Shown: positions 12,038 to 61,785 of the stretch, in pieces | How the letters are laid out: each line of letters opens with the position of its first letter | Numbering within the stretch: position 1 is the stretch's first letter | Virus record (IMG/VR): IMGVR_UViG_3300046787_000408 | Coordinates: 62,001 to 126,000 of that record | DNA length: 64,000 bases | Reading direction: 5' to 3' (one strand) | Position numbers and translations under genes: made by a program | The notes under the pieces: model-generated | Seen by the model: only the letters and a program-made list of their open reading frames with translations | Databases searched by the model: none | Told to the model about the DNA's origin: nothing

Positions 12038-12397
12038 ATGAGCACAGTTAATCAAGTAAACCTACAGCAAGACCTAACAGTACGAGTGTTTGATCGCTTT
12101 TACAGTTTTGACGTTGAGGTTCCTGTCAACGAATACGATGCTGTGTATTCTTACTTTCGCAGTGTAATGACCACAGACCGTGCAGCAGGAAATTTTGCTG
12201 TGAGCCTGTTTAGAATTGCACAGACCACCAACATTCCAGCAATGACACTGTTGGCCGGGTTCCAAGGCCAATCAGGTGTTAACCTCACAGTGAATCTTGC
12301 CTACTATCTCAACTTGATTCGTAGCAAGGCCACACTGTTGGGAGTGAATGCCAGTGCAACTCCCAACTTCTACGCAGCCCGAGCAGTGCTACAATGA
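12038..12397 (+). CDS. Hypothetical virion protein
   Basis: Coupled ORF inside the structural operon. Confidence 0.6.
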   Translation: MSTVNQVNLQQDLTVRVFDRFYSFDVEVPVNEYDAVYSYFRSVMTTDRAAGNFAVSLFRIAQTTNIPAMTLLAGFQGQSGVNLTVNLAYYLNLIRSKATLLGVNASATPNFYAARAVLQ

Positions 12398-12840: not shown

Positions 12841-13332
12841 ATGACGCGGAAACTTGAAGAACTTTTTGATTTGCCATCTTCAGTTGAAATACCAACTGAA
12901 TCGGACACCCCCACTATCGAGGAAACTCGTACTCAGTTGGCAGCAATTGACTCTACCATAGACAAAATAGATGCGGCATTGCCCGCAGTGCGCGGACTTG
13001 ATGCCAGCGACACAGAAATGGACGATCTAGCACAGCTGGCACAAGACAGCTACAAAGATCTCATGGATCTAGGCATGCAAGTGGATAGTCGATTTGCTAG
13101 CGAAATATTCTCGGTAGCATCAAACATGCTGGGTCATGCTATCACTGCCAAAACAGCCAAGCTCAACAAAAAACTCAAGATGATTGATCTACAAATGAAG
13201 AAGATCAAGCTGGATCGAGATGTGCCCGAGGACCAAAAACCCATGCAAACCGCCGAGGGCATGGTGTTAAACCGCAATGATTTGCTGGAGCGTTTGCTAA
13301 AAGGCAAAGACCAAAATGCTGCAAAAGAATAA
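12841..13332 (+). CDS. Possible terminase small subunit (helical)
   Basis: Helical coiled-coil, RFASEIFSVASNML...A..AK.NK, C-terminal R.DLL..L. Assigned mainly from context. Confidence 0.5.
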   Translation: MTRKLEELFDLPSSVEIPTESDTPTIEETRTQLAAIDSTIDKIDAALPAVRGLDASDTEMDDLAQLAQDSYKDLMDLGMQVDSRFASEIFSVASNMLGHAITAKTAKLNKKLKMIDLQMKKIKLDRDVPEDQKPMQTAEGMVLNRNDLLERLLKGKDQNAAKE

Positions 13333-13352
13333 ATATACAATAGGACACTGAC

Positions 13353-13961
13353 ATGAAACCATTTGCAAAATACCTGGCCGAGAGTGAACGCACATACCAA
13401 TATCGTATCAAGATAGTTGGCGACGTGCCCACAGGCTTTATCAAAGATCTTGAATCAAAGATGTCGCAATTTGATGTAGTCAAGATGGGCAAGCCCAAGA
13501 CTGCACCTGTGCGCAAAAACATTCCAGACTTTCCAGCTTTTCCCAATCAGCCCATGACCATTGTGGATGTGGAGTTTCGCTATCCAGCCATTGAGCCACA
13601 AATCAAACAGTTGGCACAGTTGTTGGGCATGGACCCAAATCGTATTGTTATGAACACAGATGCATACGAACAAAGTCTTGACGACGAAGACAAAAAAATT
13701 CTTGATCAAAACAAAGACCTGTTGGACACTGCTGAGTATCCCCAAGATGATGCACAACAACGTGCATTGAAAAAGGACTACGCAACTGGCCCATATGACC
13801 ACGCTGTGCTGAAAAATGCATATCGTACCAAGTTTACTATTGCTGGCGAAAAAACTCCCCCAGCCAAGACCACAAATGAGTTGCCACAAGGTGTCAAAAG
13901 CCCCATGACCAACATCAAGCGTAAACCCAAGCCAGCAACTGGCGCAAACCCAAGAGGATAA
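13353..13961 (+). CDS. Probable internal head protein
   Basis: N-terminus MKPFAKYLAE resembles the T4 capsid-targeting sequence. TAAATA promoter upstream. Confidence 0.6.
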   Translation: MKPFAKYLAESERTYQYRIKIVGDVPTGFIKDLESKMSQFDVVKMGKPKTAPVRKNIPDFPAFPNQPMTIVDVEFRYPAIEPQIKQLAQLLGMDPNRIVMNTDAYEQSLDDEDKKILDQNKDLLDTAEYPQDDAQQRALKKDYATGPYDHAVLKNAYRTKFTIAGEKTPPAKTTNELPQGVKSPMTNIKRKPKPATGANPRG

Positions 13962-13965
13962 TAAC

Positions 13966-15858
13966 ATGAGTTTCTTTTACAATCTAAACAACAAACTAAA
14001 CGCTATTCGCGATTTGCCCAGTACTACTCACGGACAACTCAATGAGCGTGACATGAGCCGTGCTGCCAAGGGCTATGAAAAGTATGGCAAAGAAGGCATG
14101 GAAGCTTTGGCCAAGGCTGGACGTGAAGGCAAAGACCTTGACAAGGTTCGCAACAAGTACGACAAGTATGACGAGTCAGTGGAAGAAGGTCTAGGCGACA
14201 TGGCTCGCAAGGTGGGCGGTGCTGTTAAAAAGGTAGCTGGTAAAGCACTAGATACTATTGGACATGGCAATGACGCTGACATGATTCGTGATCTACAAAA
14301 GAAAATGGGCGTGCCACAGACTGGTATGAAGCCAGGTGCAGAACCAAATCCCAAGCAAGTCAAAGAAAAAATGAATCCAGCCAAGGCCAAGAGCTTTGCT
14401 GCACTTGCTGAACCCAAAGACAAAATTACTTTTGCTGACAAGATCGCTGGTGCCAAGAAAGAAGTTGACGAGATGTTAGGTGACGTTGCTGCTGAAGCAA
14501 TGAAGCAAGCACTTGGTGGCGGCAAACAAGTTGTTGCCAGTGAAGACGATGATAACAATCCTTTCACAAACTGGAAGAAGCCACGTGCTGACAAACCCAA
14601 AGTTGGTACAATCACACATGGTCGCAAACACGATGTGGAAGAAATCCCTGGTGGTCGTAGAGTAACTCGCAGAGTTGATCCGAGTGGTATCAGTGTTGGT
14701 GCTGACGACGAAGCTGCACAAAGCGGTGAAAAGCGCGGACGTGGTCGTCCAAAGAAAGCTGGCGGCCCTGCACAAGAGCGAGTAACAGCCAACAGTCGCA
14801 AAGCCGATCGCACAAGATTCCAAAGCAAGAAAAAAGTTGCCGAAGAAGGCGATAACGAAAGCGACGAAATCAAACAAGCAATGGCCATGCTGAAAAAAGC
14901 CGGCTATAAAGTTAGCAAAGCAGCTGACGGTGCTGAACAAGTGGACGAAAAAGCAGTAAGCAAGAAGCAACAAAAGTTCATGGGCATGGTCCATGCAACA
15001 CAAAAGGGCGAAAAAGCTCCTAGCAAAGAAGTTGCTAAAGTTGCCAAGACCATGAAGAAAGGTGATGCAGAAGATTTTGCAAGCACCAAGCACAAAGGTT
15101 TGCCTGAAAAGAAAAAGCCTGAAGGCAAGAAAGAAAAAACTGAAGAAGCAACAGACAGCACTCCATCCAAAGGCGGTATGAAGTTTGGTGGCGGCATCTA
15201 TGACAGCATGAATCGTGAACTTGAAAACATGATCAAAGAAAGCATGGCTCGTCTAGACGAAAGCATGAGCATCAACATGAGCATGAACAATGATGAGCAC
15301 GGCGGCCCTACCAAGAGCCTTACTGTGACTGCTACTGACGATGATGCAATGAAACTGAGTCAGCTGTTGAAAAGCGCAGGCCTGGGCGGCGGCGATGAAG
15401 AAGGTTACGGCGGATCTGGATACAAGAGCGCATGCGGTTGCGGAACACCTGACTGCTCATGTGGTGACGACGAGTTAGACGAAGTGTCCATGAATCAACC
15501 TGACTATCCAACAGAAACAGAAACCAGTAGTGATGCACTGCAATACGCAGGTGGCCTCAACAAGCCTAAAGCAACAGGTCAAACAACCGCTCCAGTTATT
15601 GCTAGCCAAGATGATCGTCAAGAAAGTTATGCTGAAGCTGAAGAAGATGCCCTGCACCGCATGATGGAAATGGCCGGCGTCAAGAAAAAAGAAGTTGACG
15701 AAGAAAAAACTGACGAAGGCAACAAGTTCACTGGCAATCTGGCCAAGGCTCGTGCTGCTGGCAAAAAAGAAGCTGACCTAGACGGTGACGGCGACATGGA
15801 AAAAGTTCAAGAAAGTATTTTTGACTTGACCAATCAATGGAAAGCATACAAAGGATAA
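13966..15858 (+). CDS. Large charged low-complexity protein, probable internal/core protein with AT-hook and DUF3008-like segment
   Basis: K/E/D-rich 630 aa. Contains KRGRGRPKK and AVSKKQQKFMGMV...DFASTKHKGLPEKK, plus many hydrophobic-x-E sites. Confidence 0.65.
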   Translation: MSFFYNLNNKLNAIRDLPSTTHGQLNERDMSRAAKGYEKYGKEGMEALAKAGREGKDLDKVRNKYDKYDESVEEGLGDMARKVGGAVKKVAGKALDTIGHGNDADMIRDLQKKMGVPQTGMKPGAEPNPKQVKEKMNPAKAKSFAALAEPKDKITFADKIAGAKKEVDEMLGDVAAEAMKQALGGGKQVVASEDDDNNPFTNWKKPRADKPKVGTITHGRKHDVEEIPGGRRVTRRVDPSGISVGADDEAAQSGEKRGRGRPKKAGGPAQERVTANSRKADRTRFQSKKKVAEEGDNESDEIKQAMAMLKKAGYKVSKAADGAEQVDEKAVSKKQQKFMGMVHATQKGEKAPSKEVAKVAKTMKKGDAEDFASTKHKGLPEKKKPEGKKEKTEEATDSTPSKGGMKFGGGIYDSMNRELENMIKESMARLDESMSINMSMNNDEHGGPTKSLTVTATDDDAMKLSQLLKSAGLGGGDEEGYGGSGYKSACGCGTPDCSCGDDELDEVSMNQPDYPTETETSSDALQYAGGLNKPKATGQTTAPVIASQDDRQESYAEAEEDALHRMMEMAGVKKKEVDEEKTDEGNKFTGNLAKARAAGKKEADLDGDGDMEKVQESIFDLTNQWKAYKG

Positions 15859-15862
15859 TATC

Positions 15863-16033
15863 ATGAGCAAAATTCTTAAAGAATCTGTATTGACCACTGT
15901 ACCAGTCATGAACCCGCATGCTCCTGCACCACAAACAGGTCGTCAAACACCTGTGGAAATTCCAGGAGTGATGTATCAAACTCGTGAGCTGTTTCAACCT
16001 GTGGTCAGTCACCCCAACAAGGATAGCAAATAA
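15863..16033 (+). CDS. Small hypothetical protein (56 aa)
   Basis: Hand translation MSKILKESVLTTVPVMNPHAP...NKDSK. AGGA RBS, and the stop overlaps the next ATG. Confidence 0.6.
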   Translation: MSKILKESVLTTVPVMNPHAPAPQTGRQTPVEIPGVMYQTRELFQPVVSHPNKDSK

Positions 16034-16323
16034 TGGCTAATGTATACACCAGTCTGGCCAATGCAACGGTTTACACTGACAAGCTACAAATCTCTACAGC
16101 GGCAAATGCAGTGACTTACCAGTCATATGCAGTGTCGCTGGGTACAGCTAATGCAGTGGGCAACATTTATTCTGCTCCAATTAACATTCCTGCAAACACA
16201 GTGTTTGAAGTGTATGCAGGCGCGGGCAACAAAGTCACAGTAACCGGCACACCTTTTACTGCACTAGAACTAGGCACAGCCAGTTCAGCCACTGCTGGCG
16301 TTTACAACTCAGCAGGCCAATAA
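16033..16323 (+). CDS. Small beta-rich virion protein
   Basis: Coupled ORF with A/T/N/V-rich structural composition. Confidence 0.6.
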   Translation: MANVYTSLANATVYTDKLQISTAANAVTYQSYAVSLGTANAVGNIYSAPINIPANTVFEVYAGAGNKVTVTGTPFTALELGTASSATAGVYNSAGQ

Positions 16324-16688
16324 TGAGAGCACGAGAGTTCATGGCAGAAGATGCAGTTGGCAAGATTAGCAAACGCAATCAAAATGCCACTGTGGGCTTG
16401 AACAAGTTTCGAGATCCGCAGTTTGCTGACCGTGTGTATGAACTCAACCGTATCATGATGGCAGTGGCTTCTACTGACGGGACCAATGTACCTGAAATTG
16501 ATAGTGAATCTTGGAGTGGTCGCAACAACGTGGCAGCACCGTACACTCGAGAAGAACAAGCCATGCTGAAAAAAGCATATCAAGCAGTAGGCAGTCGCCA
16601 TGAAGATTTGAATCACGGTGATTTAGATTCAGAAGAGCATCCAGCGGTAAACACAACTAGTCCTGTCAAGGCGTTTCGAGGATACTGA
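16323..16688 (+). CDS. MRAREF-family small protein 1
   Basis: Starts MRAREFMAE and ends NTTSPVKAFRGY. Paralogue of the next ORF. Confidence 0.7.
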   Translation: MRAREFMAEDAVGKISKRNQNATVGLNKFRDPQFADRVYELNRIMMAVASTDGTNVPEIDSESWSGRNNVAAPYTREEQAMLKKAYQAVGSRHEDLNHGDLDSEEHPAVNTTSPVKAFRGY

Positions 16689-17068
16689 TGCGAGCACGTG
16701 AGTTTATTCGTGAGCAGAAAGAACTGCCAGCTGAGCAGGCCAATCCCATGCGTTACACTTATGTGATTCCTGGTCTAAGTGCAGCTGACCCTTATAAAAA
16801 TTATAGATTTGGTGTGGCCATGGCCAGAGCCCGCAGTGATGCTGGCACAGATGGTATCAATGCTAAATTTCCTGAGTGGGATAACGAAACAGCATTTGGT
16901 GAACATGGCGTGGTTGCTGGCATGAATGCCGGTATTGCTCAAGTTATTGATCAAGCATTGAGCATGACCAAAACACCCGGCGGCAAGAAAATAGTGTCTA
17001 CTCCTGCTAGTACAGAACCCACGTTTGTGGACACACAAAGCCCAATTAAAGCATTTAAAGGATATTGA
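16688..17068 (+). CDS. MRAREF-family small protein 2
   Basis: Starts MRAREFIRE and ends DTQSPIKAFKGY. Confidence 0.7.
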   Translation: MRAREFIREQKELPAEQANPMRYTYVIPGLSAADPYKNYRFGVAMARARSDAGTDGINAKFPEWDNETAFGEHGVVAGMNAGIAQVIDQALSMTKTPGGKKIVSTPASTEPTFVDTQSPIKAFKGY

Positions 17069-17069
17069 A

Positions 17070-17417
17070 ATGAGAGCCTCAGAAATACTACGCCAAATGG
17101 CTGACATGATTGACGCAAAGTCACAACCTGAACATTCGCATGATGATACGCATGACAGTGACTTGATTCCGGTACCCGATGGTGTGTTTTTGCCCCCACT
17201 ACAAGGCAAGTACGAACTGTTGAAAAAAGCAGTGGGTGTGGACAATGCATTTGATGAGAACGCAGGCAACCAGTCAGACGATCCCGAAGCATCAAACCAC
17301 AAAGTAACGCCCATGGAACCTGATGAACAAGATGCACTGGACCGTATGAAAAAAGCAGCTGGCATCAATGCACTGATTGTGCATGATCTTGGTGATGACG
17401 AGCCATTGGACAGTTAA
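17070..17417 (+). CDS. Small acidic protein (MRASEIL...)
   Basis: Start re-picked at 17070, directly after the previous stop. Confidence 0.65.
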   Translation: MRASEILRQMADMIDAKSQPEHSHDDTHDSDLIPVPDGVFLPPLQGKYELLKKAVGVDNAFDENAGNQSDDPEASNHKVTPMEPDEQDALDRMKKAAGINALIVHDLGDDEPLDS

Positions 17418-17429
17418 GAGTAGCCTGCA

Positions 17430-18896
17430 ATGAACTTTATTCAAAATTTCTATACCAGTCGCGACAACAATACAGATGGCAATACCTATGTAGGGCAACA
17501 GGATCGACTGTGGTGGAATCCTAATACTAATGCAATCTATGTAAATTCAGCCAATGTGGCCGGCGGTACCCCAGTAACATTGCCAGCTACCGCTAACTTG
17601 ACAATCAACAGCCTTACGGCTAACACTGCAACAATCAACACTAACCTAGTGGTCACTGGCAACATTAGCCCAGCAGCCAACAACAAGATTGGCGGTATTG
17701 CACCTGGGCCAGGTATTAACATTTCCAACATTGGTCTGCTCACAATTGACTCAGCCGGACTTCCTGTTAGTTTTGGAGACTTTTATGCCAACGTAAATCA
17801 GTTGAGCATGGTTAATGCTAATGAGGCTATGTACTTGGTATCCAATGGCACAGGCAACATCAATCTCATTGGCGGAGTAAACTTCTACAAACCCAATGGA
17901 TTCCCTCCATCTACGGAACCGTTTTTTAGAGCCAAGAGTGACGGACAACTGAGAATTTTAGTACCAGCTGAAGATCCCTTTGAAGGTGGTGTGGAAATCA
18001 TTGGAAGTTCCACAGGCAATTACCTTGCTCCCGGCAGTCCCGGTACCATGCTACACCTCACTGGTAATCCTGGAGTACCAACTCGCTTGTATATTGACGG
18101 CAATGCTGAATACGCCAGTTTTGTGGCTCGTCGATTCAACGGCAATGTTGCTGTGCCTACGCAGGTCCTAGCTGGACAAGATGTGTTACGCATCAACTCA
18201 ACTGCGGCCACAAATCTTGGTGGCGGCAACGTGGGCAACGTGGCCATGGCACAAATTCGTACCACTGCTCTAGAAAATCAAACTTCCACAGCCCAAGGAT
18301 CATCAATCACATTTACGGTGACACCTATTGGATCAGCAGCAAGTGCTAGGGTAGATGTTGCCAACGTCACAGTAGCCAACGGCATTACAGCTACTAAATT
18401 TACTACAACAGGCAATATCTCTGGTGGAAATCTCAATCTTTCTGGAAATATAACAGCTGACTATGTACAAGCCAACAATTTTGGTAATGTAGGCAATGTT
18501 GAAATTGAAGCCGGCGAGACCTATTGGTATTTTAATACAGACAACACATTCACAGGCAACGGTAACATCATAGTTGACACAGTTACTGCCAACCTTATAG
18601 GCACAGCTACCACGGCCACAAACCTCGCCGCAGCCACCAGCATATTGGCCGGCACATTGACCATAGACCCTGCCAACATCAACAAAACTTCAGCCAGCAC
18701 ACAGACTTTTACTCTAACTGGATTGACCACCAGCCACAAAATTGTAATCACTTCGGGAACAGCACTAACTTATGGTGTTGTCATTGCGGCCGCTTGGGCC
18801 AGTGCAGCTGATACAATCAGCATTGAGTTCCAAAACTACACTGGCGGCGGTGTTAATCTTGGCAGTACAAACATACAATACTTTGCCTGGGTATAA
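17430..18896 (+). CDS. Tail fibre / appendage-like structural protein
   Basis: N/T/G/A-rich beta-repeat composition (GNISGGNLNLSGNITA) and N-terminal YVGQQDRLWWNP motif. Confidence 0.6.
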   Translation: MNFIQNFYTSRDNNTDGNTYVGQQDRLWWNPNTNAIYVNSANVAGGTPVTLPATANLTINSLTANTATINTNLVVTGNISPAANNKIGGIAPGPGINISNIGLLTIDSAGLPVSFGDFYANVNQLSMVNANEAMYLVSNGTGNINLIGGVNFYKPNGFPPSTEPFFRAKSDGQLRILVPAEDPFEGGVEIIGSSTGNYLAPGSPGTMLHLTGNPGVPTRLYIDGNAEYASFVARRFNGNVAVPTQVLAGQDVLRINSTAATNLGGGNVGNVAMAQIRTTALENQTSTAQGSSITFTVTPIGSAASARVDVANVTVANGITATKFTTTGNISGGNLNLSGNITADYVQANNFGNVGNVEIEAGETYWYFNTDNTFTGNGNIIVDTVTANLIGTATTATNLAAATSILAGTLTIDPANINKTSASTQTFTLTGLTTSHKIVITSGTALTYGVVIAAAWASAADTISIEFQNYTGGGVNLGSTNIQYFAWV

Positions 18897-53785: not shown

Positions 53786-54982
53786 ATGGAAAAAGGTAAA
53801 AATTTGTATTGTGCCTGGGCTGACACAGGCCTAGCACTGCATAATTCAGGACGATGCTTGCTGTGTTGTCATAGCCAAACTTATTTGCAGGACACAAATG
53901 GCCAGGAAATATACCTGGACACAGGCTCTATTGAACAGGCCTGGAACAGTCCCACTAGAAAACAAATTCAAGCAGATCTTGAAGCTGGTATTCAGCATCC
54001 CAATTGCAGCGCATGTTGGAACGAAGAAAGTGCAGGGCGTGCAAGTCGCCGCACAGAAGCCAATCGACAGTTTGCTGATATCACTGTCAACCCTGACCGT
54101 CCGCAACTGGTAGACCTTAAACCTGGCAATACCTGCAACTTGGCATGCAGAACCTGTTGGCCTGAAGTCAGCAGCAAATGGTATCGAGACTATTGGGAAG
54201 TTGAAGCTCAGAAATGGGAACCAGACTACCGCAAGTATCTTGATGGGTGGAAACGTATCCGCACCAGTTATGACCGCGATAACGTAAAGCTGTGGTCTGA
54301 CCTAGAATCGTGGTTTACAGACGTAGAGTACTATGACATCTACGGGGCAGAGCCAATGCTGTTGGACAATGTGTTTGTGATCTTACAACAAAGTGTGGCA
54401 TCAGGTAGAGCAGCACATCAAGGCATACACATCAACACCAACTGTACTATATGGAATCAAAGCTACATTGATATTCTTGCACAATTCAAGAACGTGGTTA
54501 TTGACGTTAGCATTGATGGGATTGGCGCACAATATGACTATATTCGTTATGGCGAAACTTGGAGCACTGTGGAACTGAATCTTGCTAGGTATCAGAATCT
54601 AGTTCGTAACCACAGCAACATTCGCATGCATGTTTGTGTCACTGTGTGTATTCTAAATGTATTGCAAGTGATGAACCTGCAGGAATATTTTTGTGCCCGT
54701 GGTGTTCCTGTATTTTTTAACATGGTACATCATCCACAACACTTGAATGTGAGATCCTTGCCTGACACTATCAAACAACAGGTACGAGCCAAGTTTGCAC
54801 CTGCTGAACCCAATTGGCAAATAACCAGTATACTGGATTTCATGGACATGCCCCTGGACAATCAACCTCAACTGTGGCTCAAGTTCTTGGAGTCAACAAA
54901 AAAGCTAGACCTGTTACGAGAACAAGATCTAGCTGAAACGTTTCCTGAATTGGCAGAATTGATTAGCCGGCTACAGCCTTGA
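53786..54982 (+). CDS. Radical SAM protein with N-terminal twitch/SPASM-like domain
   Basis: YCAW...G...LCC, C..CW..E, CNLACRTC, GAEP, INTNC, SIDG. Confidence 0.87.
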   Translation: MEKGKNLYCAWADTGLALHNSGRCLLCCHSQTYLQDTNGQEIYLDTGSIEQAWNSPTRKQIQADLEAGIQHPNCSACWNEESAGRASRRTEANRQFADITVNPDRPQLVDLKPGNTCNLACRTCWPEVSSKWYRDYWEVEAQKWEPDYRKYLDGWKRIRTSYDRDNVKLWSDLESWFTDVEYYDIYGAEPMLLDNVFVILQQSVASGRAAHQGIHINTNCTIWNQSYIDILAQFKNVVIDVSIDGIGAQYDYIRYGETWSTVELNLARYQNLVRNHSNIRMHVCVTVCILNVLQVMNLQEYFCARGVPVFFNMVHHPQHLNVRSLPDTIKQQVRAKFAPAEPNWQITSILDFMDMPLDNQPQLWLKFLESTKKLDLLREQDLAETFPELAELISRLQP

Positions 54983-55904
54983 TCACAGCAAAGTTAAAGA
55001 CTGGTTGTTCAGTAGTGGTTCCTGCAGTGGTTTTATAGCTGATACGGAAACTACCTGCAGCCACAGCAGTAACGTGTATTTCATACAGATCAGTGCCAGA
55101 CTTTTGATTTACAATAACAACGTCAGTTGCAGCCACTGTGGAATTGGTTACAGTAAAGCTCTGCCAAGATGTCGTACCAGCAGCAGAAAACAAAGTAATG
55201 GCACCAGATACTGTGTTTAGTGTAACACCTGTGGTTCTACTGGTACCTTGTGTTACAGCACCACCTGCACCTGTAGCGTAGCCAATACCAGCTGTGGCAG
55301 AATTAGAAGTTACACCATTGGTGTAACGATTCAATGGACGGTTAAGGTCTTGAATAGTTATTGCTGCACCGCTATCGTATGTGGTAAATTCAAATGTGTA
55401 TGTGCCAGTAGCAGCAAATGTGATCACACTGCCTGCTAGGCCTTGAATACCAGTAGTGCCCAAACTTACTTCAGCAGGTAGTGTCACAGTGTGTGCGATA
55501 TTGGTAATGTTTATTGTTACACGAACCCATCCTGCAGAGTTATTGGCGGGCCAGTTAGAAAAGCCCAATTGAATACTGCCAGTTGTGCTAACAGTTTGGT
55601 AATGCCCAGCAGTGTAGTCAATGCTGACCAAGCCCGAAGTAGTTGCAATCTGTACCAATGTTGCGCTAAAATTACGTACTTTAGCACCAACTAACGGTGC
55701 GCCCAACATGTTGTTGTCTAACGTGCTGCCAGTTAATGCTTCTTTGAATATAGATTTGTTCTGTAATTCAGTGATTTCATTAGCAGCATACTCAAAGTTG
55801 GTTTTGGTATTGGTAAAATTATCACGGAACCCTTTGGTATTATTGGGTTGTCCAGCAACAGGGTAGTTGCCGTTGATGTCTTGGGGATTGATTTGACTAG
55901 TCAT
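54963..55904 (-). CDS. Virion structural protein (tail/baseplate appendage-like)
   Basis: T/A/G/N-rich. N-terminal YPVAG..N...GFRDNF and C-terminal VTQ.TSRTTGVTLN beta domain. AGGA RBS and TAAATA at 55935-55940. Confidence 0.6.
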   Translation of the reverse strand: MTSQINPQDINGNYPVAGQPNNTKGFRDNFTNTKTNFEYAANEITELQNKSIFKEALTGSTLDNNMLGAPLVGAKVRNFSATLVQIATTSGLVSIDYTAGHYQTVSTTGSIQLGFSNWPANNSAGWVRVTINITNIAHTVTLPAEVSLGTTGIQGLAGSVITFAATGTYTFEFTTYDSGAAITIQDLNRPLNRYTNGVTSNSATAGIGYATGAGGAVTQGTSRTTGVTLNTVSGAITLFSAAGTTSWQSFTVTNSTVAATDVVIVNQKSGTDLYEIHVTAVAAGSFRISYKTTAGTTTEQPVFNFAVIKAVAG

Positions 55905-55983: not shown

Positions 55984-56244
55984 ATGCAGAAGAAAACAAA
56001 AAGTATCTTGGAAGAATTGGACACATTGTACGAAGAAAAATATGCCGAGAGAGATCGCAGGTATATTATTGAAACTCGTGCTAGCAATGTAATTGCTTCT
56101 GCCATTCGCTTGATAGAACAAATTGAGTCAGAGTTCCCCGGGGAACAAGCAGAAAATCTCACACGCAAGCTGCTCAATGCCATAAGAACAAAAGACTCTG
56201 GAAAGTTTTCCAGATCAGTAAGGAAAACCGATGCAGATTCATGA
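55984..56244 (+). CDS. Small helical hypothetical protein
   Basis: ORF after TAAATA at 55959. Confidence 0.65.
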   Translation: MQKKTKSILEELDTLYEEKYAERDRRYIIETRASNVIASAIRLIEQIESEFPGEQAENLTRKLLNAIRTKDSGKFSRSVRKTDADS

Positions 56245-56908
56245 AATAACACACCGACAGATAAACGAAATATTGGGCACAATGGCCAAGGCTGTGGGCG
56301 GCGCCCTAGCGCAAAAAGCTGCATCAACACAAGGTATTGACCTAGACAGTCAACCTGACAAAGTGGGCGTGGGACAACGACAGGGTGCTGCCATGAAAAT
56401 GAACGCTGGCCTTATTCAAGCCCTGGCCAAGAAAGCACAAGAATCCTGGACCACAGAAGTACAAAACATGATTGTAAAAAGTGAGCCCAAGATCATGAGT
56501 GCGTCCCAGATCAAACTGCCCACAATTGAATTGGAACTTCAGGCCTTGATCAACAGCTTGGCTGGATTTGATGTAACCAGCCTGGCATCGGCCAAAGACC
56601 CCAGTGGACAAAGTCAACTTACTATTAAACAGCTATTGCAGGCCAAAGATGAAGTGGTCAAGGCCACTGTGGCACCCAAGGCTGATCCTGCTGCAATGAG
56701 TCGTGCATGGAACAGTTTGGCTACCATGATTTCCCAAGCACAAAACGTCAAGGCATTTGTGCCAGCTGAAGCTGGCGGCACACAGCCAGCAAAAATTACA
56801 TTCGACGCACAAGGTAAAATGTTGTACAACAACAAGCCTTTTGACGCTAGAGATCAAAGCCATGTCATGGCTCAACAACTTCAGGCCAAGGCCGCACCCA
56901 AAACATGA
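56231..56908 (+). CDS. Probable internal head protein
   Basis: MQIHEI...INE N-terminus. A/Q/K-rich helical. Confidence 0.55.
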   Translation: MQIHEITHRQINEILGTMAKAVGGALAQKAASTQGIDLDSQPDKVGVGQRQGAAMKMNAGLIQALAKKAQESWTTEVQNMIVKSEPKIMSASQIKLPTIELELQALINSLAGFDVTSLASAKDPSGQSQLTIKQLLQAKDEVVKATVAPKADPAAMSRAWNSLATMISQAQNVKAFVPAEAGGTQPAKITFDAQGKMLYNNKPFDARDQSHVMAQQLQAKAAPKT

Positions 56909-58824
56909 AACTATTACAAACTCTATTAGAAGGCGGTAATGTCTTTAAAGACAAACAAGGACAGCCATTAACACAGCGCATCAATCAAGCAGATGTGCCT
57001 GCTACCATTGCCTATCTTGAAAACATTCTAGGCATGGAATTCCCCCAAGAACGTTGGTTGGGATCCACAGGTCGCAAGCCCACATCTGGAGACTTGGATT
57101 TAGCTGTGGATCTTGGCGAAATCAACAAAGATCAACTTGCTGCCAAGCTCACACAGTTTGTGCAAAGTCAAAAACAAGACCCACGTGAGTGGGTTAAAAA
57201 AGCCGGCGAAGTGCATTTCCGCACTCCCATTGCTGGAGATCCCAACAAAGGCTACGTACAAACAGACTTTATGTTTTTCCCTAACTTGGACTGGGGCACA
57301 TTCTTCTACGGTGGCGCAGAGGGATCCAACTACAAAGGCATGAATCGCAATGTGCTGATGTCAAGCATTGCCAAAGCACTGGGACTCAAAGTGGGTGCCA
57401 ATGGCATGTTTAGCCGTGCCACAAATGAATTGGTTCGAGGCGGTCAAGATCCCAACTATGTGGCCAACGTTTTGCTGGGACCTGCATTCTCCCGAGAAAA
57501 TCTAAAAAATGTTGAAAGCATTTACAAAGCACTCAGCAATGATCCTGATCGAGAAATCAAACTAAAAGACTTCCGTGAATATCTAGCACGTGAAGGCCTA
57601 CAAGAGCCACAACAGTCCATGGCCGAAGATGGCGTGGGCTTTTTGGGACGACTTCGCGATCGCATTGTAAATCAAGGCATGATGCCCTTGGTAGAAGCGT
57701 CTAACCCTTATGAATTGTACGAAGCAGAAGCAGCCGGTGTAGGCGGCAGAGCCAAGGGCATTGAACACTTGGAAGATCTAGTGTTTCGCCGTGGTACCCA
57801 GGGTATCCTAGATGCCTTGGAAATTGTGCAACACGCCACAGAAAAACCCAGTACAACCACTGCTAAATGGGACGGCAAACCTGCTGTGATATTTGGTCGT
57901 AAGCCTAGTACAGGTGAGTTTGTGCTTACAGACGGATCAGGGTTCGAAGCCAAGGGCTACGATGGTCTAGCTACCAGTCCCAGAATGATGGCAGACATAC
58001 AAAGTCGACGTTCGGGCGACAGAACAGAACTGATTCAATTGTATGCTACTCTGTTCCCGGTACTGGAGGCTGCACTGCCCTCCAACTTCCGTGGCTATGT
58101 CAAAGGTGACTTGTTGTACATGTCAACACCTCCTGAGATTGCAGGAAACTATGTGTTCCGTCCCAATACTGTTGAGTACAAAATTCCAGCACGAAGTTCC
58201 TTGGGGCAACGCATTGGCAACAGCAACATTGGCATTGCTATTCACAGCATGTATGCAGATGTTGGCGATGCACGTCAGCCCTTGAGCGGCGTAAAGTTCA
58301 ATGATGTTCCAGGCTTGATGTTAGAGCGTCCTGCTACACCGCGACAACTCACTACAGAACCTGCCAAGGTCAAGCAACTCAAACAACTGGTACGTAGCAG
58401 TGGTTCGGCAATCAACACACTGTTCAACCCTGTGGAATTGCGTGCTAACAAGATCACTGACTTGGCCAAACTGTGCGTGGACTATATCAACACCAAGGTA
58501 GGAACTCCACTCAACCCACAAACACTATTGCCTGAGTTTGGGGAATGGCTCAAGACCAAGGTAACACCGCAAAAGTTCCGTAACATTGTGGAATACCTGC
58601 AGAGCCCTACGTCAAATACACAGGCCATGGCTGCTGCATTTACAGCGTTCTTGTTGTTGCATGACATCAAGATGGATATCTTGCGACAAGCTGATCTTGA
58701 GCATCCTGGACAAGAAGGTTGGGTAATGGCTACCCCTGCAGGCTATGCCAAGGCAGTAAATCGCTTTGACCCCAATGCATTTGCTGCTCAAAATAGAATG
58801 CAAAATAATCCTCAAACCCGGTGA
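56905..58824 (+). CDS. Pol-beta-superfamily nucleotidyltransferase fused to an RNA/DNA-ligase-like domain
   Basis: N-half LGSTG....SGDLDLAV and VQTDF. C-half EHLEDL, KWDGKP, VKGDLLY, QEGWV, KAVNR. Confidence 0.75.
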   Translation: MKLLQTLLEGGNVFKDKQGQPLTQRINQADVPATIAYLENILGMEFPQERWLGSTGRKPTSGDLDLAVDLGEINKDQLAAKLTQFVQSQKQDPREWVKKAGEVHFRTPIAGDPNKGYVQTDFMFFPNLDWGTFFYGGAEGSNYKGMNRNVLMSSIAKALGLKVGANGMFSRATNELVRGGQDPNYVANVLLGPAFSRENLKNVESIYKALSNDPDREIKLKDFREYLAREGLQEPQQSMAEDGVGFLGRLRDRIVNQGMMPLVEASNPYELYEAEAAGVGGRAKGIEHLEDLVFRRGTQGILDALEIVQHATEKPSTTTAKWDGKPAVIFGRKPSTGEFVLTDGSGFEAKGYDGLATSPRMMADIQSRRSGDRTELIQLYATLFPVLEAALPSNFRGYVKGDLLYMSTPPEIAGNYVFRPNTVEYKIPARSSLGQRIGNSNIGIAIHSMYADVGDARQPLSGVKFNDVPGLMLERPATPRQLTTEPAKVKQLKQLVRSSGSAINTLFNPVELRANKITDLAKLCVDYINTKVGTPLNPQTLLPEFGEWLKTKVTPQKFRNIVEYLQSPTSNTQAMAAAFTAFLLLHDIKMDILRQADLEHPGQEGWVMATPAGYAKAVNRFDPNAFAAQNRMQNNPQTR

Positions 58825-60046: not shown

Positions 60047-60540
60047 TCAAACACGAGAAACTTGAACGCTTTGCCACTAAAGAAATGCAAAGTCTAGCTA
60101 CCAGGCTTATTGTGCCTGATGGCAAGGACGGCTATCATGCATTTGGCAAGTATCATGTATCTCCCAAAACTGAACATGTTACTGTTGGTATCAAGAATAG
60201 AGATCCACTAACCTTTGGAAGCAAACGCAGCGCTATCAGTTGGTGTGTAGCAGATCACCTAAATCAGCACGCTCTAGCACGTAGCATTCATTTGCTAGAC
60301 AACAAAAAACATAGCCTAGCGGCGGACATACAGTGCCGACGGGCTCTAGCCGAAAGAAGTCGCAGCCAAGACTTCTATGAATCAGTAACAACCAAGATAC
60401 AAAGCAAGGTTGAGTACTATAATGTGTTGACTCAGGAATTAGAGAAATGCATTAATTCGGCTAAATATTGGCAAATAAGAGGATTCTCCCATGAAACTGA
60501 ACGACCTGGCCGCTCCGCGTCCCACAAAACAAATCGCTAA
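60043..60540 (+). CDS. Hypothetical protein
   Basis: ATGA coupling. Start re-picked. Confidence 0.6.
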   Translation: MIKHEKLERFATKEMQSLATRLIVPDGKDGYHAFGKYHVSPKTEHVTVGIKNRDPLTFGSKRSAISWCVADHLNQHALARSIHLLDNKKHSLAADIQCRRALAERSRSQDFYESVTTKIQSKVEYYNVLTQELEKCINSAKYWQIRGFSHETERPGRSASHKTNR

Positions 60541-61435
60541 AGTATTTGAAAGTTACTTTGGTACTGGTATCAAGTTTGAAAGCCTAAGTCGCAATCAGAC
60601 TCGAAATCTGTTGAGCCGTGTGCAAGGCTTGCTCAAAGAGCACCGTAGCACATCAGCTAGACACACCAGCGAACAAAATCCCAGTTACCTCAAACTGGTT
60701 ATGATGGAACAAGCACTGACTCAGCGAGTTAAAGAAAACATGGTGCCGCCAGTGGGTCAAACTACTCCACCTGGACAACCAGCCAAGCCTGGACAACCAG
60801 CCAAGCCTGGACAACCGGCCCCTGCTGTGGCAGGCGCTGCGGCTAAAGATCCCAAGTTGGCTGCGGCACTGAAGAAAAGCCAAGCAGGCCAAACACTGAA
60901 TCCTGAAGAACAAAAGATGGTAGCTGGTGCTGCCATGATGGCGCAAGAAAGTCGTTTACGCCGTGCCTACAAGATGTTGAAAGAAAGTGAAGTTCAACAA
61001 GCTCAAGTTGTTCTTGCTGCCCAAGACATGGTAGACAAAATGCAAGGTATGTTGGAAGACGTATCTGAACTACAGTTCAAAGAACTGCCAGCCTTGGTTG
61101 ATTCAATCAAGAACCAAGTTGGTATTGACCAAGCCACTCAGTTCAACGGTGATGCTAGTGCTGCACTCAGCGGACTCATGCAAAACCTGCAAGCAGCCAA
61201 GCAACAACTGGACCAAGCCCTGGGCGTGGTAACTGGTACTGCTGCTCCAGCTGCTCCTGACGCTGCGGCAATGGGTGCTCAAGCTGGTGCTGAACTAGGC
61301 GCAGAAGCTGGTGCTGACATGGGTGCTGAACTAGGCGCAGAAGCTGGTGCTGAAGATGACCTAGCTGCTGTTGATGCTGAAGCTGAACTAGGTGCAGAGC
61401 CAGCTGGTGCTGCTCTAGGCCGCGCACGTAGATAA
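60491..61435 (+). CDS. Probable head core/scaffold-like protein with low-complexity repeats
   Basis: Coiled coils, PGQPAK x3, GAELGAEAGA repeats, LKESE site. Confidence 0.6.
   Translation: MKLNDLAAPRPTKQIAKVFESYFGTGIKFESLSRNQTRNLLSRVQGLLKEHRSTSARHTSEQNPSYLKLVMMEQALTQRVKENMVPPVGQTTPPGQPAKPGQPAKPGQPAPAVAGAAAKDPKLAAALKKSQAGQTLNPEEQKMVAGAAMMAQESRLRRAYKMLKESEVQQAQVVLAAQDMVDKMQGMLEDVSELQFKELPALVDSIKNQVGIDQATQFNGDASAALSGLMQNLQAAKQQLDQALGVVTGTAAPAAPDAAAMGAQAGAELGAEAGADMGAELGAEAGAEDDLAAVDAEAELGAEPAGAALGRARR
60770..60820 (+). repeat. 18-bp coding tandem repeat (about 2.8 copies)
   Basis: CCTGGACAACCAGCCAAG unit encoding PGQPAK. Confidence 0.9.
61286..61353 (+). repeat. 32-bp direct repeat, 36-bp period, coding
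   Basis: GGTGCTGAACTAGGCGCAGAAGCTGGTGCTGA twice, encoding GAELGAEAGA. Confidence 0.85.
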
Positions 61436-61785
61436 TGAAAATATTTGAAGTAGCCGGAGACTCATCTACACCCAGTCCTGACCAATTGTTGGGACTGGTG
61501 CAGTTTCTTGCAGGCCGCGCTGACGATACTAGCGCTCCAAAACAGATCAGTGTAGATGCGTTTGTGAACTTGGCGCAGAGCCTAGACATCAACGTAAACC
61601 GAAACAACGTTGAAGAAATTGTAGGACAACCACCACTCAGTAGTGTGTTGGAACCATTTGAACCTGACACAAACCAAATTGTGTTCAAAGGTGCCGAACA
61701 GTCTGGTCCTACCCAAATGCCCGTAAACAAAGCACAAGACATTGTGGCCGCAGCAGCCAAATCGGCGATGAAACGTAAACGATAA
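61435..61785 (+). CDS. Small hypothetical protein (MKIFEV...)
   Basis: Coupled ORF. Confidence 0.65.
   Translation: MKIFEVAGDSSTPSPDQLLGLVQFLAGRADDTSAPKQISVDAFVNLAQSLDINVNRNNVEEIVGQPPLSSVLEPFEPDTNQIVFKGAEQSGPTQMPVNKAQDIVAAAAKSAMKRKR

What the first reader, a model, noticed from the sequence alone, without database searches (positions are those of the whole stretch)
13353..17417. Family of capsid-targeting-like N-termini marks a set of probable injected proteins
Seen: MKPFAKYLAE (13353), MSKILKE (15863), MRAREFMAE (16323), MRAREFIRE (16688) and MRASEIL (17070). Elsewhere: MQIHEI..INE (56231), MKLLQTLLE (56905), MKLNDL (60491) and MKIFEV (61435). Established: the T4 internal-protein capsid-targeting sequence is MKTYQEFIAE, cleaved by gp21 after Glu. 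Inference: these ORFs are the phage's internal cargo, a class that in T4 includes the anti-restriction protein IPI*, so this is a shortlist of unknown counter-defence or host-takeover proteins.
Basis: partly seen in the sequence, partly recalled or inferred. Interest (0 to 1): 0.6.

Follow-up and report, generated by a model that had tools for sequence, protein, structure and literature searches.

The report
Nine-residue capsid-address tag on phage proteins

Summary
The window lies in a 300-kb IMG/VR jumbo-phage record. It has a T4-type head module, including an S77 (gp21-like) prohead protease.

**Confirmed.** There is a position-specific N-terminal leader, M-R-A-x-E-F-[ILV]-x-E.
- It heads window genes 16323 and 16688, and five more genes elsewhere in the genome. 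Two further N-termini are degenerate versions: window gene 17070 and genome gene 212792.
- It recurs 2-6 times in each of 10 related genomes, against 0 in reversed-pattern controls.
- It sits on at least 37 unrelated protein bodies, including NUDIX, GNAT-like and ligase-like ones.
- Its last five residues, E-F-[ILV]-x-E, equal the T4 capsid-targeting sequence E-F-I-A-E.
- Where Glu9 is lost in orthologues, a new [LI]-x-E appears four residues later.

**Not confirmed.**
- A generic hydrophobic-x-Glu near the N-terminus is not enriched.
- 56231, 60491 and 61435 get no statistical support. 15863 is undecided.
- 17070 travels with a fibre-like gene.

**Separately supported.**
- 13353 has a 10-residue leader in the T4 register, and its PA5oct homologue is annotated as a virion protein.
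- 56905 keeps a conserved h-x-E just before its conserved body.

Packaging, cleavage and injection are inferred, not shown. Genes 16323 and 16688 are conserved core genes, unlike the variable T4 internal proteins. I class this as a new variant of a known kind.

The parts
13328..13335 (+). AATAAATA, a T4-late-promoter-like motif 25 nt before gene 13353. It is the nearest promoter-like site upstream of 16323 and 16688.
   Evidence: [AT]ATAAATA occurs 16 times in the genome, 15 of them intergenic. It sits upstream of head and tail genes. This is consensus matching only.
13353..13961 (+). 202-aa protein with a 10-residue leader in the T4 register, MKPFAKYLAE|S (leader = 13353-13382). Probable virion protein.
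   Evidence: In 48 clade orthologues M1, Y7, L8 and E10 are invariant, K2, F4 and S11 are near-invariant, and positions 3, 5, 6 and 9 vary. PA5oct homologue gp282 is annotated 'structural protein, ESI-MS/MS'. Atu_ph07 keeps MKTLQDYLTE, but PA5oct and Phosso lack Glu10. AF2 pLDDT is 70 with a generic ferredoxin-like core and no PDB match at E<=1e-3.
13966..15858 (+). 630-aa charged, low-complexity protein with no leader. It is the positional counterpart of PA5oct virion protein gp281.
   Evidence: A ~50-aa central domain matches phrog_30268 and a 69-aa protein that the S-SCSM1 cyanophage record names 'virion protein'. Synteny with PA5oct.
15863..16033 (+). 56-aa protein, MSKILKE|S. Possible short leader; undecided.
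   Evidence: Orthologues read M..[YILV][NK]E before a conserved NPH[AS]PA, but some lack the Glu. It does not match the MRA PSSM. No family hit.
16033..16323 (+). 96-aa protein without a leader, in the same operon.
   Evidence: No family hit.
16323..16688 (+). 121-aa core protein with leader MRAREFMAE (16323-16349) and a C-terminal SPVKAFRGY motif.
   Evidence: Found in 78 of 80 related loci, which keep MRAxEF. Where Glu9 is lost, [LI]xE appears at 11-13. PSSM score 14.0. Paralogue of 16688.
16688..17068 (+). 126-aa core protein with leader MRAREFIRE (16688-16714) and a C-terminal SPIKAFKGY motif.
   Evidence: More than 2700 metagenomic homologues. In 37 orthologues M1, R2, A3, F6 and E9 are invariant, and insertions fall just after the leader. 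Median identity is 71%, against 73% for the head-closure protein. PSSM score 18.6. The AF2 model has low confidence and predicts the leader as a helix.
17070..17417 (+). 115-aa acidic protein starting MRASEILRQMAD. Degenerate resemblance only; part of a cassette with the next gene.
   Evidence: No early h-x-E. Found in only 12 of 80 loci, and next to a MSFIQNxxTSRDNN fibre-like gene in the loci whose downstream genes were listed. PSSM score 2.6.
17430..18896 (+). 488-aa fibre-like protein, the variable partner of 17070.
   Evidence: No family hit.
56905..58824 (+). 639-aa protein: N-terminal Pol-beta-type nucleotidyltransferase-like part plus a DUF6267 ligase-like part (KWDG), behind MKLLQTLLE|GGNVFKD (56905-56931).
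   Evidence: DUF6267 at 1.1e-30. Relatives read MNIFE|GG, MHLLE|GG and MKLTE|GG. One IMG/VR homologue reads MRAQEFISTPVLLE|GGNIWK. Cyanophage and pelagiphage homologues of the ligase part have no leader. The NTase assignment comes from reading the motif, not from a family hit.
56231..56908 (+). 225-aa protein starting MQIHEI..INE. Not supported as a member.
   Evidence: No orthologue in the syntenic loci of 5 complete relatives. PSSM null fraction 0.04. No family hit.
60491..61435 (+). 314-aa protein starting MKLNDL. Probably a virion protein, but the leader claim is unsupported.
   Evidence: phrog_14154 'virion structural protein' at 1.8e-11. Orthologues read MKLxEL, and this copy has Asp. 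PSSM score at chance level.
61435..61785 (+). 116-aa protein starting MKIFEV. Orthologues read MRILEV, MLIREF or MRINEV, a loose M-[RKL]-I-x-E-[VF] resemblance. Undecided.

Best explanation
The phage belongs to an abundant uncultured clade of jumbo myoviruses; complete relatives are 320-353 kb. Its head is built with T4-type parts: portal, small core proteins, an S77 gp21-like prohead protease, a scaffold and a gp23-like capsid protein.

In this clade the N-terminal nonapeptide M-R-A-x-E-F-[ILV]-x-E most likely acts as a capsid-targeting and processing propeptide, the local version of the T4 CTS.
- The MRAxEF part would dock the newly made protein onto the scaffolding core while the prohead assembles.
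- The prohead protease would then cut after Glu9 (P3 aliphatic, P1 Glu, as for gp21).
- The mature body would stay inside the head.

In the flagged interval this applies to the paralogous core proteins 16323 and 16688, which are probably the main internal head proteins. With a different 10-residue leader in the T4 register it also applies to 13353. All are transcribed from a late-type promoter beside the head-closure and terminase genes.

Elsewhere in the genome and the clade the same tag is fused to variable bodies, many of them basic or enzyme-like (NUDIX, GNAT-like, ligase-like, DUF6321). These are the better candidates for cargo ejected with the DNA.

**Shown:** the motif, its position specificity, its portability, its boundary with the body, the compensatory h-x-E, the presence of the protease, and protein-level selection.
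**Inferred:** docking, cleavage, retention in the head, ejection, and any host-directed function.
For: 1. **T4-type head module with an S77 protease.** PF03420 at 8.4e-25; phrog_207, phrog_213 and phrog_138; the MCP aligns to gp23 structures at 1e-39.
2. **Match to the T4 CTS.** Aligned on the Glu, the leader E5-F6-[ILV]7-x8-E9 equals T4 E6-F7-I8-A9-E10. In T4, residues 4 and 7 carry targeting and residues 8 and 10 carry processing (PMC9026906).
3. **Position specificity and statistics**.
4. **Recurrence.** 52 pattern hits in 11 genomes (3.4 Mb), always on the coding strand, against 0 for reversed controls. The ten relatives were chosen through leader-bearing genes, so at least 1-2 hits in each are there by construction. 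In five cultured relatives there is 1 hit, not at a start.
5. **Portability.** At least 37 body clusters. They include a NUDIX domain beginning at residue 9 (8.8e-19).
6. **Boundary.** The body WS.KYK.SI.C has MRANEFISE here, MK[ST]FKQFQE in two cyanophages, and only Met-Gly in S-SRM01.
7. **Compensation.** Orthologues that lose Glu9 gain LSE, ITE, INE or LKE at residues 11-13.
8. **Selection on the peptide, not the DNA.** Synonymous sites vary freely and there is no upstream conservation.
9. **Protease specificity.** The scaffold-like protein has the highest [LIVMF]xE density in the proteome (6.6 per 100 aa against a median of 1.66), and the protease ranks fourth.
10. **Co-occurrence.** All 5 further large leader-bearing contigs encode S77.
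11. **Late-type motif** upstream.
12. **Charge.** Several predicted mature bodies are basic, pI 8.9-11.1 against a genome median of 5.9.
Against: - There is no direct evidence of virion presence or cleavage for any MRA protein.
- No cultured phage carrying the leader was found, so no proteome applies.
- 16323 and 16688 are conserved core genes with near-neutral pI, unlike the T4 internal proteins.
- About one fifth of unbiased leaders (7 of 33) lack [ILV]xE at positions 7-9.
- The operon holding the MRANEFLNE protein has a sigma-70-like TATAAT motif and no late-type one.
- The residue matching T4 targeting position 4 is Ala, not an aromatic.
- PA5oct and Phosso homologues of 13353 lack Glu10.
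Confidence: 0.62

Rival explanations
1. The leader is a prohead-protease propeptide of head-assembly proteins only. On this view 16323 and 16688 are core or scaffold-type components, like the small T4 core proteins. They would be needed to build or fill the head and then be degraded, or stay as structural filler. They would not be injected effectors, and the counter-defence idea would be wrong for the flagged interval.
For: - 16323 and 16688 are present in nearly all of the 80 related loci, and 16688 is as conserved as the head-closure protein.
- They sit between the head-closure/TerS-like genes and the TerL-like gene.
- The small head-module protein MILNEFFNKE clusters with the leader family.
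- Their predicted mature pI is near neutral.
Against: - The same leader sits on variable enzyme-like bodies scattered outside structural modules. That is hard to explain for pure assembly factors.
- 16688 has only one early h-x-E rather than the many sites seen in the scaffold.
Confidence: 0.2
2. The nonapeptide is a tag for something other than the capsid: control of protein stability, recognition by a phage or host chaperone or protease, another kind of localisation, or an N-terminal sequence that favours translation.
For: - At least one member lies behind an early-type sigma-70-like promoter motif.
- Some members lack the Glu9 site.
- AGA is strongly preferred at codon 2 (27 of 33).
- Many members lack an obvious Shine-Dalgarno sequence.
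Against: - The P5-P1 residues are identical to the T4 CTS.
- Every large leader-bearing genome tested has the S77 protease.
- The h-x-E is restored by compensation.
- There is no nucleotide-level conservation beyond what the peptide requires.
- The leader has no hydrophobic core, unlike a secretion signal.
Confidence: 0.13
3. The shared N-termini are chance, or a remnant of common descent within one paralogous gene family, and have no function of their own.
For: 16323 and 16688 are paralogues.
Against: - Reversed-pattern controls give 0 against 52 hits.
- There are at least 37 unrelated bodies, including distinct Pfam domains.
- Homologous bodies in other phages carry a different leader or none.
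Confidence: 0.03

Closest known systems
[quoted passage not shown]
   Same: - A short N-terminal leader ending in Glu, with an aliphatic residue at P3 and Phe at P4. The last five residues are identical in type (E-F-I/L/V-x-E).
- It is portable between unrelated bodies.
- The genome encodes a homologous S77 protease, a scaffold and a gp23-type capsid.
- Several bodies are small and basic.
   Different: - It is 9 residues long, not 10, and starts M-R-A rather than M-K-T-Y, so there is no aromatic at the T4 'position 4' equivalent.
- There is no DNA-level conservation of the leader or of an upstream promoter.
- The two flagged members are conserved core genes, not variable accessory genes.
- The bodies share no detectable homology with any annotated phage family.
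- The cargo includes many enzyme-like domains.
- Cleavage and packaging are untested.
T4 Alt (packaged ADP-ribosyltransferase with gp21-cleaved propeptides)
   Same: An enzyme carried in the head behind a short propeptide cut by the prohead protease, then ejected with the DNA. This is the best analogy for the NUDIX, GNAT-like and ligase-like members.
   Different: Different leader, different enzyme classes, no homology, and function untested.
Virion proteins of Pseudomonas phage PA5oct (gp282, gp281) and the PA5oct / Rak2-like jumbo phages
   Same: - The nearest cultured head: MCP 65% identical.
- The same gene order: sheath, tube, head closure, TerS-like, gp282-like, gp281-like, TerL.
- 13353 is a weak homologue of gp282, which the record marks as found in virions by ESI-MS/MS.
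   Different: - PA5oct has no MRAxEF starts and no 16323/16688 family.
- Its gp282 lacks Glu10.
Ejection-protein propeptides of phiKZ-like giant phages (e.g. SPN3US)
   Same: Many head-internal proteins are processed by a prohead protease at a short motif ending in Glu (from the titles and abstracts listed, and general knowledge).
   Different: Unrelated head lineage, a different motif, and generally longer propeptides. Not compared here in detail.

Membership tests
T4-type CTS-bearing internal head proteins | N-terminal leader of about 10 residues ending in Glu, with an aliphatic residue two positions before it (the gp21 site) | tested here: met
   16323 reads MRAREFMAE, 16688 reads MRAREFIRE and 13353 reads MKPFAKYLAE. 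Glu9 is present in 26 of 33 leaders collected without requiring it. The feature is not met for 17070.
T4-type CTS-bearing internal head proteins | Aromatic or hydrophobic residues at the targeting positions (T4 residues 4 and 7) | tested here: inconclusive
   F6 is invariant and corresponds to T4 F7. The residue corresponding to T4 Y4 is Ala3. In 13353 both F4 and Y7 are conserved.
T4-type CTS-bearing internal head proteins | Genome encodes a gp21-type (S77) prohead protease and a scaffolding core | tested here: met
   PF03420 at 8.4e-25 and phrog_207 at 3.4e-59. The scaffold-like protein has the highest h-x-E density in the proteome. All 5 further leader-bearing contigs have S77.
T4-type CTS-bearing internal head proteins | The same leader on unrelated mature bodies (portability) | tested here: met
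   At least 37 body clusters. NUDIX, GNAT-like, HAD-like, DUF6321 and ligase-like bodies are among them.
T4-type CTS-bearing internal head proteins | Leader removed by the prohead protease during head maturation | not testable with these tools
   Indirect support only: the compensatory h-x-E and the domain boundary.
T4-type CTS-bearing internal head proteins | Mature protein present inside virions and ejected with the DNA | not testable with these tools
   Only the PA5oct homologue of 13353 carries an 'ESI-MS/MS' note. No cultured phage has the MRA leader.
T4-type CTS-bearing internal head proteins | Small, basic, non-conserved accessory proteins (the IPI/II/III character) | tested here: not met
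   For 16323 and 16688, median identity is 60% and 71% against 73% for the head-closure protein, and predicted mature pI is 5.9 and 6.8. The feature is partly met by scattered members: pI 8.9-11.1 and different sets in different genomes.
T4-type CTS-bearing internal head proteins | Sequence homology of the mature bodies to known internal proteins | tested here: not met
   No PHROG, Pfam or NCBIfam family for 13353, 16323, 16688 or 17070. tblastn of 16688 against 50,697 phage records found nothing.

The most novel reading that the evidence does not exclude
The 9-residue tag MRAxEF[ILV]xE is a general address label for the packaged and ejected proteome of a very large, wholly uncultured group of jumbo phages. 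If so, ready-made enzymes (NUDIX hydrolases, acetyltransferases, nucleotidyltransferase-ligase fusions) are delivered with the DNA as immediate host-takeover or counter-defence tools. A simple string search would then list hundreds of such effectors from metagenomes.
Probability: 0.35. Interest if true: 0.75.

Novelty: new variant of a known kind. Interest (0 to 1): 0.6.

Why it matters
Proteins that phages carry in the head and eject with their DNA act before any phage gene is expressed. They include known anti-restriction and host-modifying factors. They are usually found only by virion proteomics of cultured phages.

If this tag is a true capsid-targeting leader, it marks such proteins directly in sequence for a widespread clade that nobody has cultured. 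One member alone has more than 2700 metagenomic homologues. It would also show that the logic of the T4 CTS, with separate docking and cutting residues, extends well beyond the T-even phages, and it would offer a second, different tag for loading foreign proteins into T4-type capsids.

For the flagged interval itself the result is more modest. It most likely encodes conserved internal or virion head proteins, not a set of variable counter-defence genes.

Tried and rejected
- **Homology searches.** Megablast of the interval and tblastn of 16688 against 50,697 phage records found nothing. Pfam, PHROGs and NCBIfam gave nothing for 13353, 15863, 16033, 16323, 16688, 17070 or 17430. The ESM Atlas gave no usable hit for 16688.
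- **Structure.** AF2 of 16688 with 37 orthologues reached only pLDDT 58, so I ran no fold search on it. AF2 of 13353 reached pLDDT 70 with a generic ferredoxin-like core. Foldseek against the PDB gave no match at E<=1e-3, only S6/ACT-like look-alikes, so I assigned no function.
- **Complex prediction.** There is no verdict either way.
- **Literature.** Searching for the leader strings returned only unrelated papers. The PA5oct paper says nothing on N-terminal processing.
- **Cultured relatives.** I looked for the leader in PA5oct, Vibrio phage 2.275.O, Phosso, Serratia BF and XaC1 so that a proteome could be borrowed. It is absent from all five.
- **Rejected ideas.**
  - A conserved DNA cassette of promoter plus leader, as in the T-even IP loci.
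  - 17070 as a clear member.
- **First attempts that failed on form.** The first viral-contig pattern had too few fixed bases and was corrected. One paper search had a term that was too short.

Full report
**Context.** The window is bases 62001-126000 of a 299,983-bp IMG/VR virus record, estimated 81% complete. My own ORF calling gives about 392 genes.

The genome has a T4-type head module just upstream of the window:
- a portal (phrog_213, 2.6e-108);
- two small head-module proteins;
- an S77 prohead protease (PF03420 at 8.4e-25; phrog_207 at 3.4e-59);
- a scaffold-like protein;
- a gp23-type major capsid protein, which matches T4 gp23 structures at about 1e-39.

By capsid protein the nearest cultured phages are PA5oct/MIJ3 (65% identity), Vibrio phage 2.275.O, Phosso, Serratia BF and other Rak2-like jumbo phages. 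The flagged interval has no nucleotide match in 50,697 phage records.

**Gene map of the interval.** The window carries these genes in order:
- tail sheath, tail tube, and a head-closure protein at 12394 (gp4-like, phrog_218);
- a TerS-like gene at 12841;
- 13353 (202 aa), 13966 (630 aa), 15863 (56 aa), 16033 (96 aa), 16323 (121 aa), 16688 (126 aa), 17070 (115 aa) and 17430 (488 aa);
- further on, a TerL-like gene.

PA5oct has the same order: sheath, tube, head closure, gp283, gp282, gp281, TerL. The small genes 15863 to 17430 are therefore an addition in this clade.

**Is the observation more than chance?** The quoted N-termini are all there, but they are not one family.
- Generic motif. A hydrophobic-x-Glu with its Glu at residues 6-13 is as common in random internal windows (about 56 of 351) as at N-termini (62 of 392).
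- Strict string. 7 of the 9 'RA.EF' and 7 of the 8 'A.EF[ILVM].E' occurrences in the whole proteome follow the start Met directly.
- DNA pattern. The pattern for M-R-A-x-E-F hits 7 times, against 0 for its reversal. One hit uncovered a gene I had not called, at genome 237504.
- Clustering. Unsupervised clustering of N-terminal 9-mers gives this family as the largest cluster, ahead of the signal peptides.
- PSSM. A PSSM trained only on relatives scores seven own N-termini at 14-18.6, against a null maximum of 0.3.
- Borderline N-termini in that PSSM: genome 212792 (MRANQFISN, 5.2) and 17070 (2.6).
- Non-matching N-termini in this register: 13353, 15863, 56231, 56905, 60491 and 61435.

**The clade and the leader.** 16688 has more than 2700 metagenomic homologues at 63-90% identity. 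Eighty IMG/VR loci were fetched, several of them from contigs of 320-353 kb.

Orthologues of 16323 and 16688 keep MRAxEF[ILV]xE. When Glu9 is lost, an [LI]-x-E appears at residues 11-13, as in MRAREFVSAVLSE, VRAREFVSTKITE, MRAKEFVSVKINE and MRAREFVRRNLKE. In the 37-sequence alignment M1, R2, A3, F6 and E9 are invariant, and length variation falls just after the leader.

Counts of the pattern:
- Five complete relatives have 4-6 hits each, and five further large contigs have 2-6 each. All hits are on the coding strand, and reversed controls give 0.
- These ten genomes were chosen through leader-bearing genes, so at least 1-2 hits in each are there by construction.
- A fairer control is five cultured relatives (1.8 Mb). 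They give one hit, and it is not at a gene start.

**Portability and boundary.** In relatives the leader heads proteins unrelated to one another:
- a NUDIX hydrolase whose domain begins at residue 9 (8.8e-19);
- GNAT-like and HAD-like proteins (weak hits);
- DUF6321 proteins;
- ligase-like proteins with a KWDG motif;
- many proteins of unknown function.

The body WS.KYK.SI.C..PKGFSQ shows where the leader ends. It follows MRANEFISE here, MK[ST]FKQFQE in cyanophages Bellamy and SynMITS9220M01, and only Met-Gly in S-SRM01. The ligase-like body has no leader in P-TIM40, S-CAM4 or HTVC008M.

At the DNA level there is no upstream conservation (about 0.1 bit per base), and synonymous positions vary freely. 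Selection therefore acts on the peptide.

**Comparison with the T4 CTS.**
- The T4 CTS is MKTYQEFIAE, cut once by the prohead protease (PMC8442874).
- Its first 10 residues are enough for packaging. Residues 4 and 7 carry targeting and residues 8 and 10 carry processing. Asp10 blocks cutting but not targeting (PMC9026906).
- Aligned on the Glu, E5-F6-[ILV]7-x8-E9 of the new leader equals E6-F7-I8-A9-E10 of T4.
- The roughly 20% of leaders without Glu9 (7 of 33) would then be targeted but not cut.
- A gp21-like specificity fits two further facts: the scaffold-like protein has the highest [LIVMF]xE density in the proteome (6.6 per 100 aa against a median of 1.66), and the protease ranks fourth.
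- The capsid protein has ILE34|N and LKE42|N near the position that aligns with the T4 gp23 maturation site.
- All five extra large leader-bearing contigs encode S77.

**Item by item.**
- **16323 and 16688.** Clear members. They are paralogues that also share a C-terminal SPxKAFxGY motif, and a tandem pair of pattern hits about 370-420 nt apart recurs in nearly every related genome examined. 16688 is about as conserved as the head-closure protein (71% against 73%), with 16323 at 60%. Both have near-neutral predicted mature pI. This points to core internal or assembly proteins, not variable effectors.
- **13353.** A different 10-residue leader in the T4 register.
  - In 48 orthologues M1, Y7, L8 and E10 are invariant, K2 and F4 are near-invariant, and positions 3, 5, 6 and 9 vary. 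This mirrors the T4 mutational map.
  - Its PA5oct homologue gp282 is annotated as a virion protein by ESI-MS/MS.
  - Atu_ph07 keeps MKTLQDYLTE, but PA5oct and Phosso lack Glu10, so cleavage is not universal.
- **15863.** [YILV]-[NK]-E is common before the conserved NPH[AS]PA but not invariant. Undecided.
- **17070.** No early h-x-E. It occurs in only 12 of 80 loci and, wherever its neighbours were listed, sits next to a fibre-like MSFIQNxxTSRDNN gene. It is probably a fibre-associated cassette.
- **56905.** An h-x-E immediately precedes the conserved GGNVFKD in all relatives. One distant homologue carries MRAQEFISTPVLLE before the same body. Plausibly a member with a short leader.
- **56231.** Has no orthologue in the syntenic loci of the five relatives checked.
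- **60491.** Hits a 'virion structural protein' PHROG, but its leader is not supported.
- **61435.** Loose resemblance only.

**Timing.** Two promoter-like classes appear in intergenic DNA:
- [AT]ATAAATA, the T4-late type. 15 of its 16 sites are intergenic, before head and tail genes. One lies 25 nt before 13353 and one 13 nt before genome 237504.
- A sigma-70-like TGnTATAAT/CTATAAT class.

The flagged operon is therefore probably late. The operon with the MRANEFLNE protein has the sigma-70-like type, which counts against a purely late leader set. These are consensus matches, not expression data.

**Verdict.**
- The strict leader is real. It is most likely a capsid-targeting and processing propeptide (confidence about 0.6).
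- The injected counter-defence reading is unproven. It fits the scattered enzyme-like members better than the flagged core genes.
- No literature on these strings was found.
- I rate this a new variant of a known kind.

Noticed in passing
window 56905-58824: A two-part enzyme-like protein. The N-terminal part reads like a Pol-beta-type nucleotidyltransferase (GS...DLDLAVD). The C-terminal part is a DUF6267 ligase-like domain with a KWDG motif. Homologues of the ligase part in T4-like cyanophages and pelagiphage HTVC008M lie next to cytidyltransferase genes. It could be an RNA- or DNA-end repair enzyme.
   Followed up: partly
window 17070-18896, and loci L025, L028, L048, L055, L061, L066-L068, L072, L076, L077: The stretch downstream of the 16688 orthologue varies across the clade. 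It holds either the small acidic protein plus a fibre-like gene of 379-1222 aa, or MANPPPPY-type and MAxPDPxxVAPWYLRN-type proteins. It looks like a host-range swap region.
   Followed up: partly
genome 36402-38439 (outside the window; L002:8402-10439): The major capsid gene is followed directly by a 248-aa homing endonuclease (phrog_655, 2.4e-55). PA5oct likewise has Hef-like homing endonucleases among its tail and recombination genes.
   Followed up: no
whole genome; examples at window 13328 and genome 33473, 166895: Two intergenic motif classes: [AT]ATAAATA (15 of 16 sites intergenic, before structural genes) and TGnTATAAT/CTATAAT (47 intergenic sites on the + strand, clustered before blocks of small genes). 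This suggests T4-like late promoters and host sigma-70 early promoters.
   Followed up: partly
genome 231624-237704 (L005:2624-8704): A 1396-aa protein with amidoligase and nucleotidyltransferase hits comes first. It is followed by three leader-bearing genes (MRAQEFVTE 269 aa with a weak ParB-like hit, MRASEFVTE 68 aa, MRAQEFIAE 66 aa) and a DUF6321 protein. It looks like a small island of tagged genes.
   Followed up: partly
genome 244088-244294 (L005:15088-15294): This 68-aa basic protein starts MKMRDIME|TTTAGS. Its homologues in relatives start MRA[HS]EFIVE|TTVSG. The leader can therefore drift away from the MRA consensus while keeping the h-x-E boundary, and strict pattern counts underestimate the family.
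   Followed up: partly
window 13966-15858: Its central ~50 residues (KKQQKFMGMVHA...STKHKGLPEKKK) recur as whole small proteins in T4-like cyanophages. One of them is a 69-aa protein that the S-SCSM1 record names 'virion protein'.
   Followed up: partly
window 54963-55904 (-), and genome 203870-206308: Three proteins share the N-terminus MTS[QA]INP..I[ND]G.YPV.GQ. They are probably paralogous fibre or baseplate proteins.
   Followed up: no
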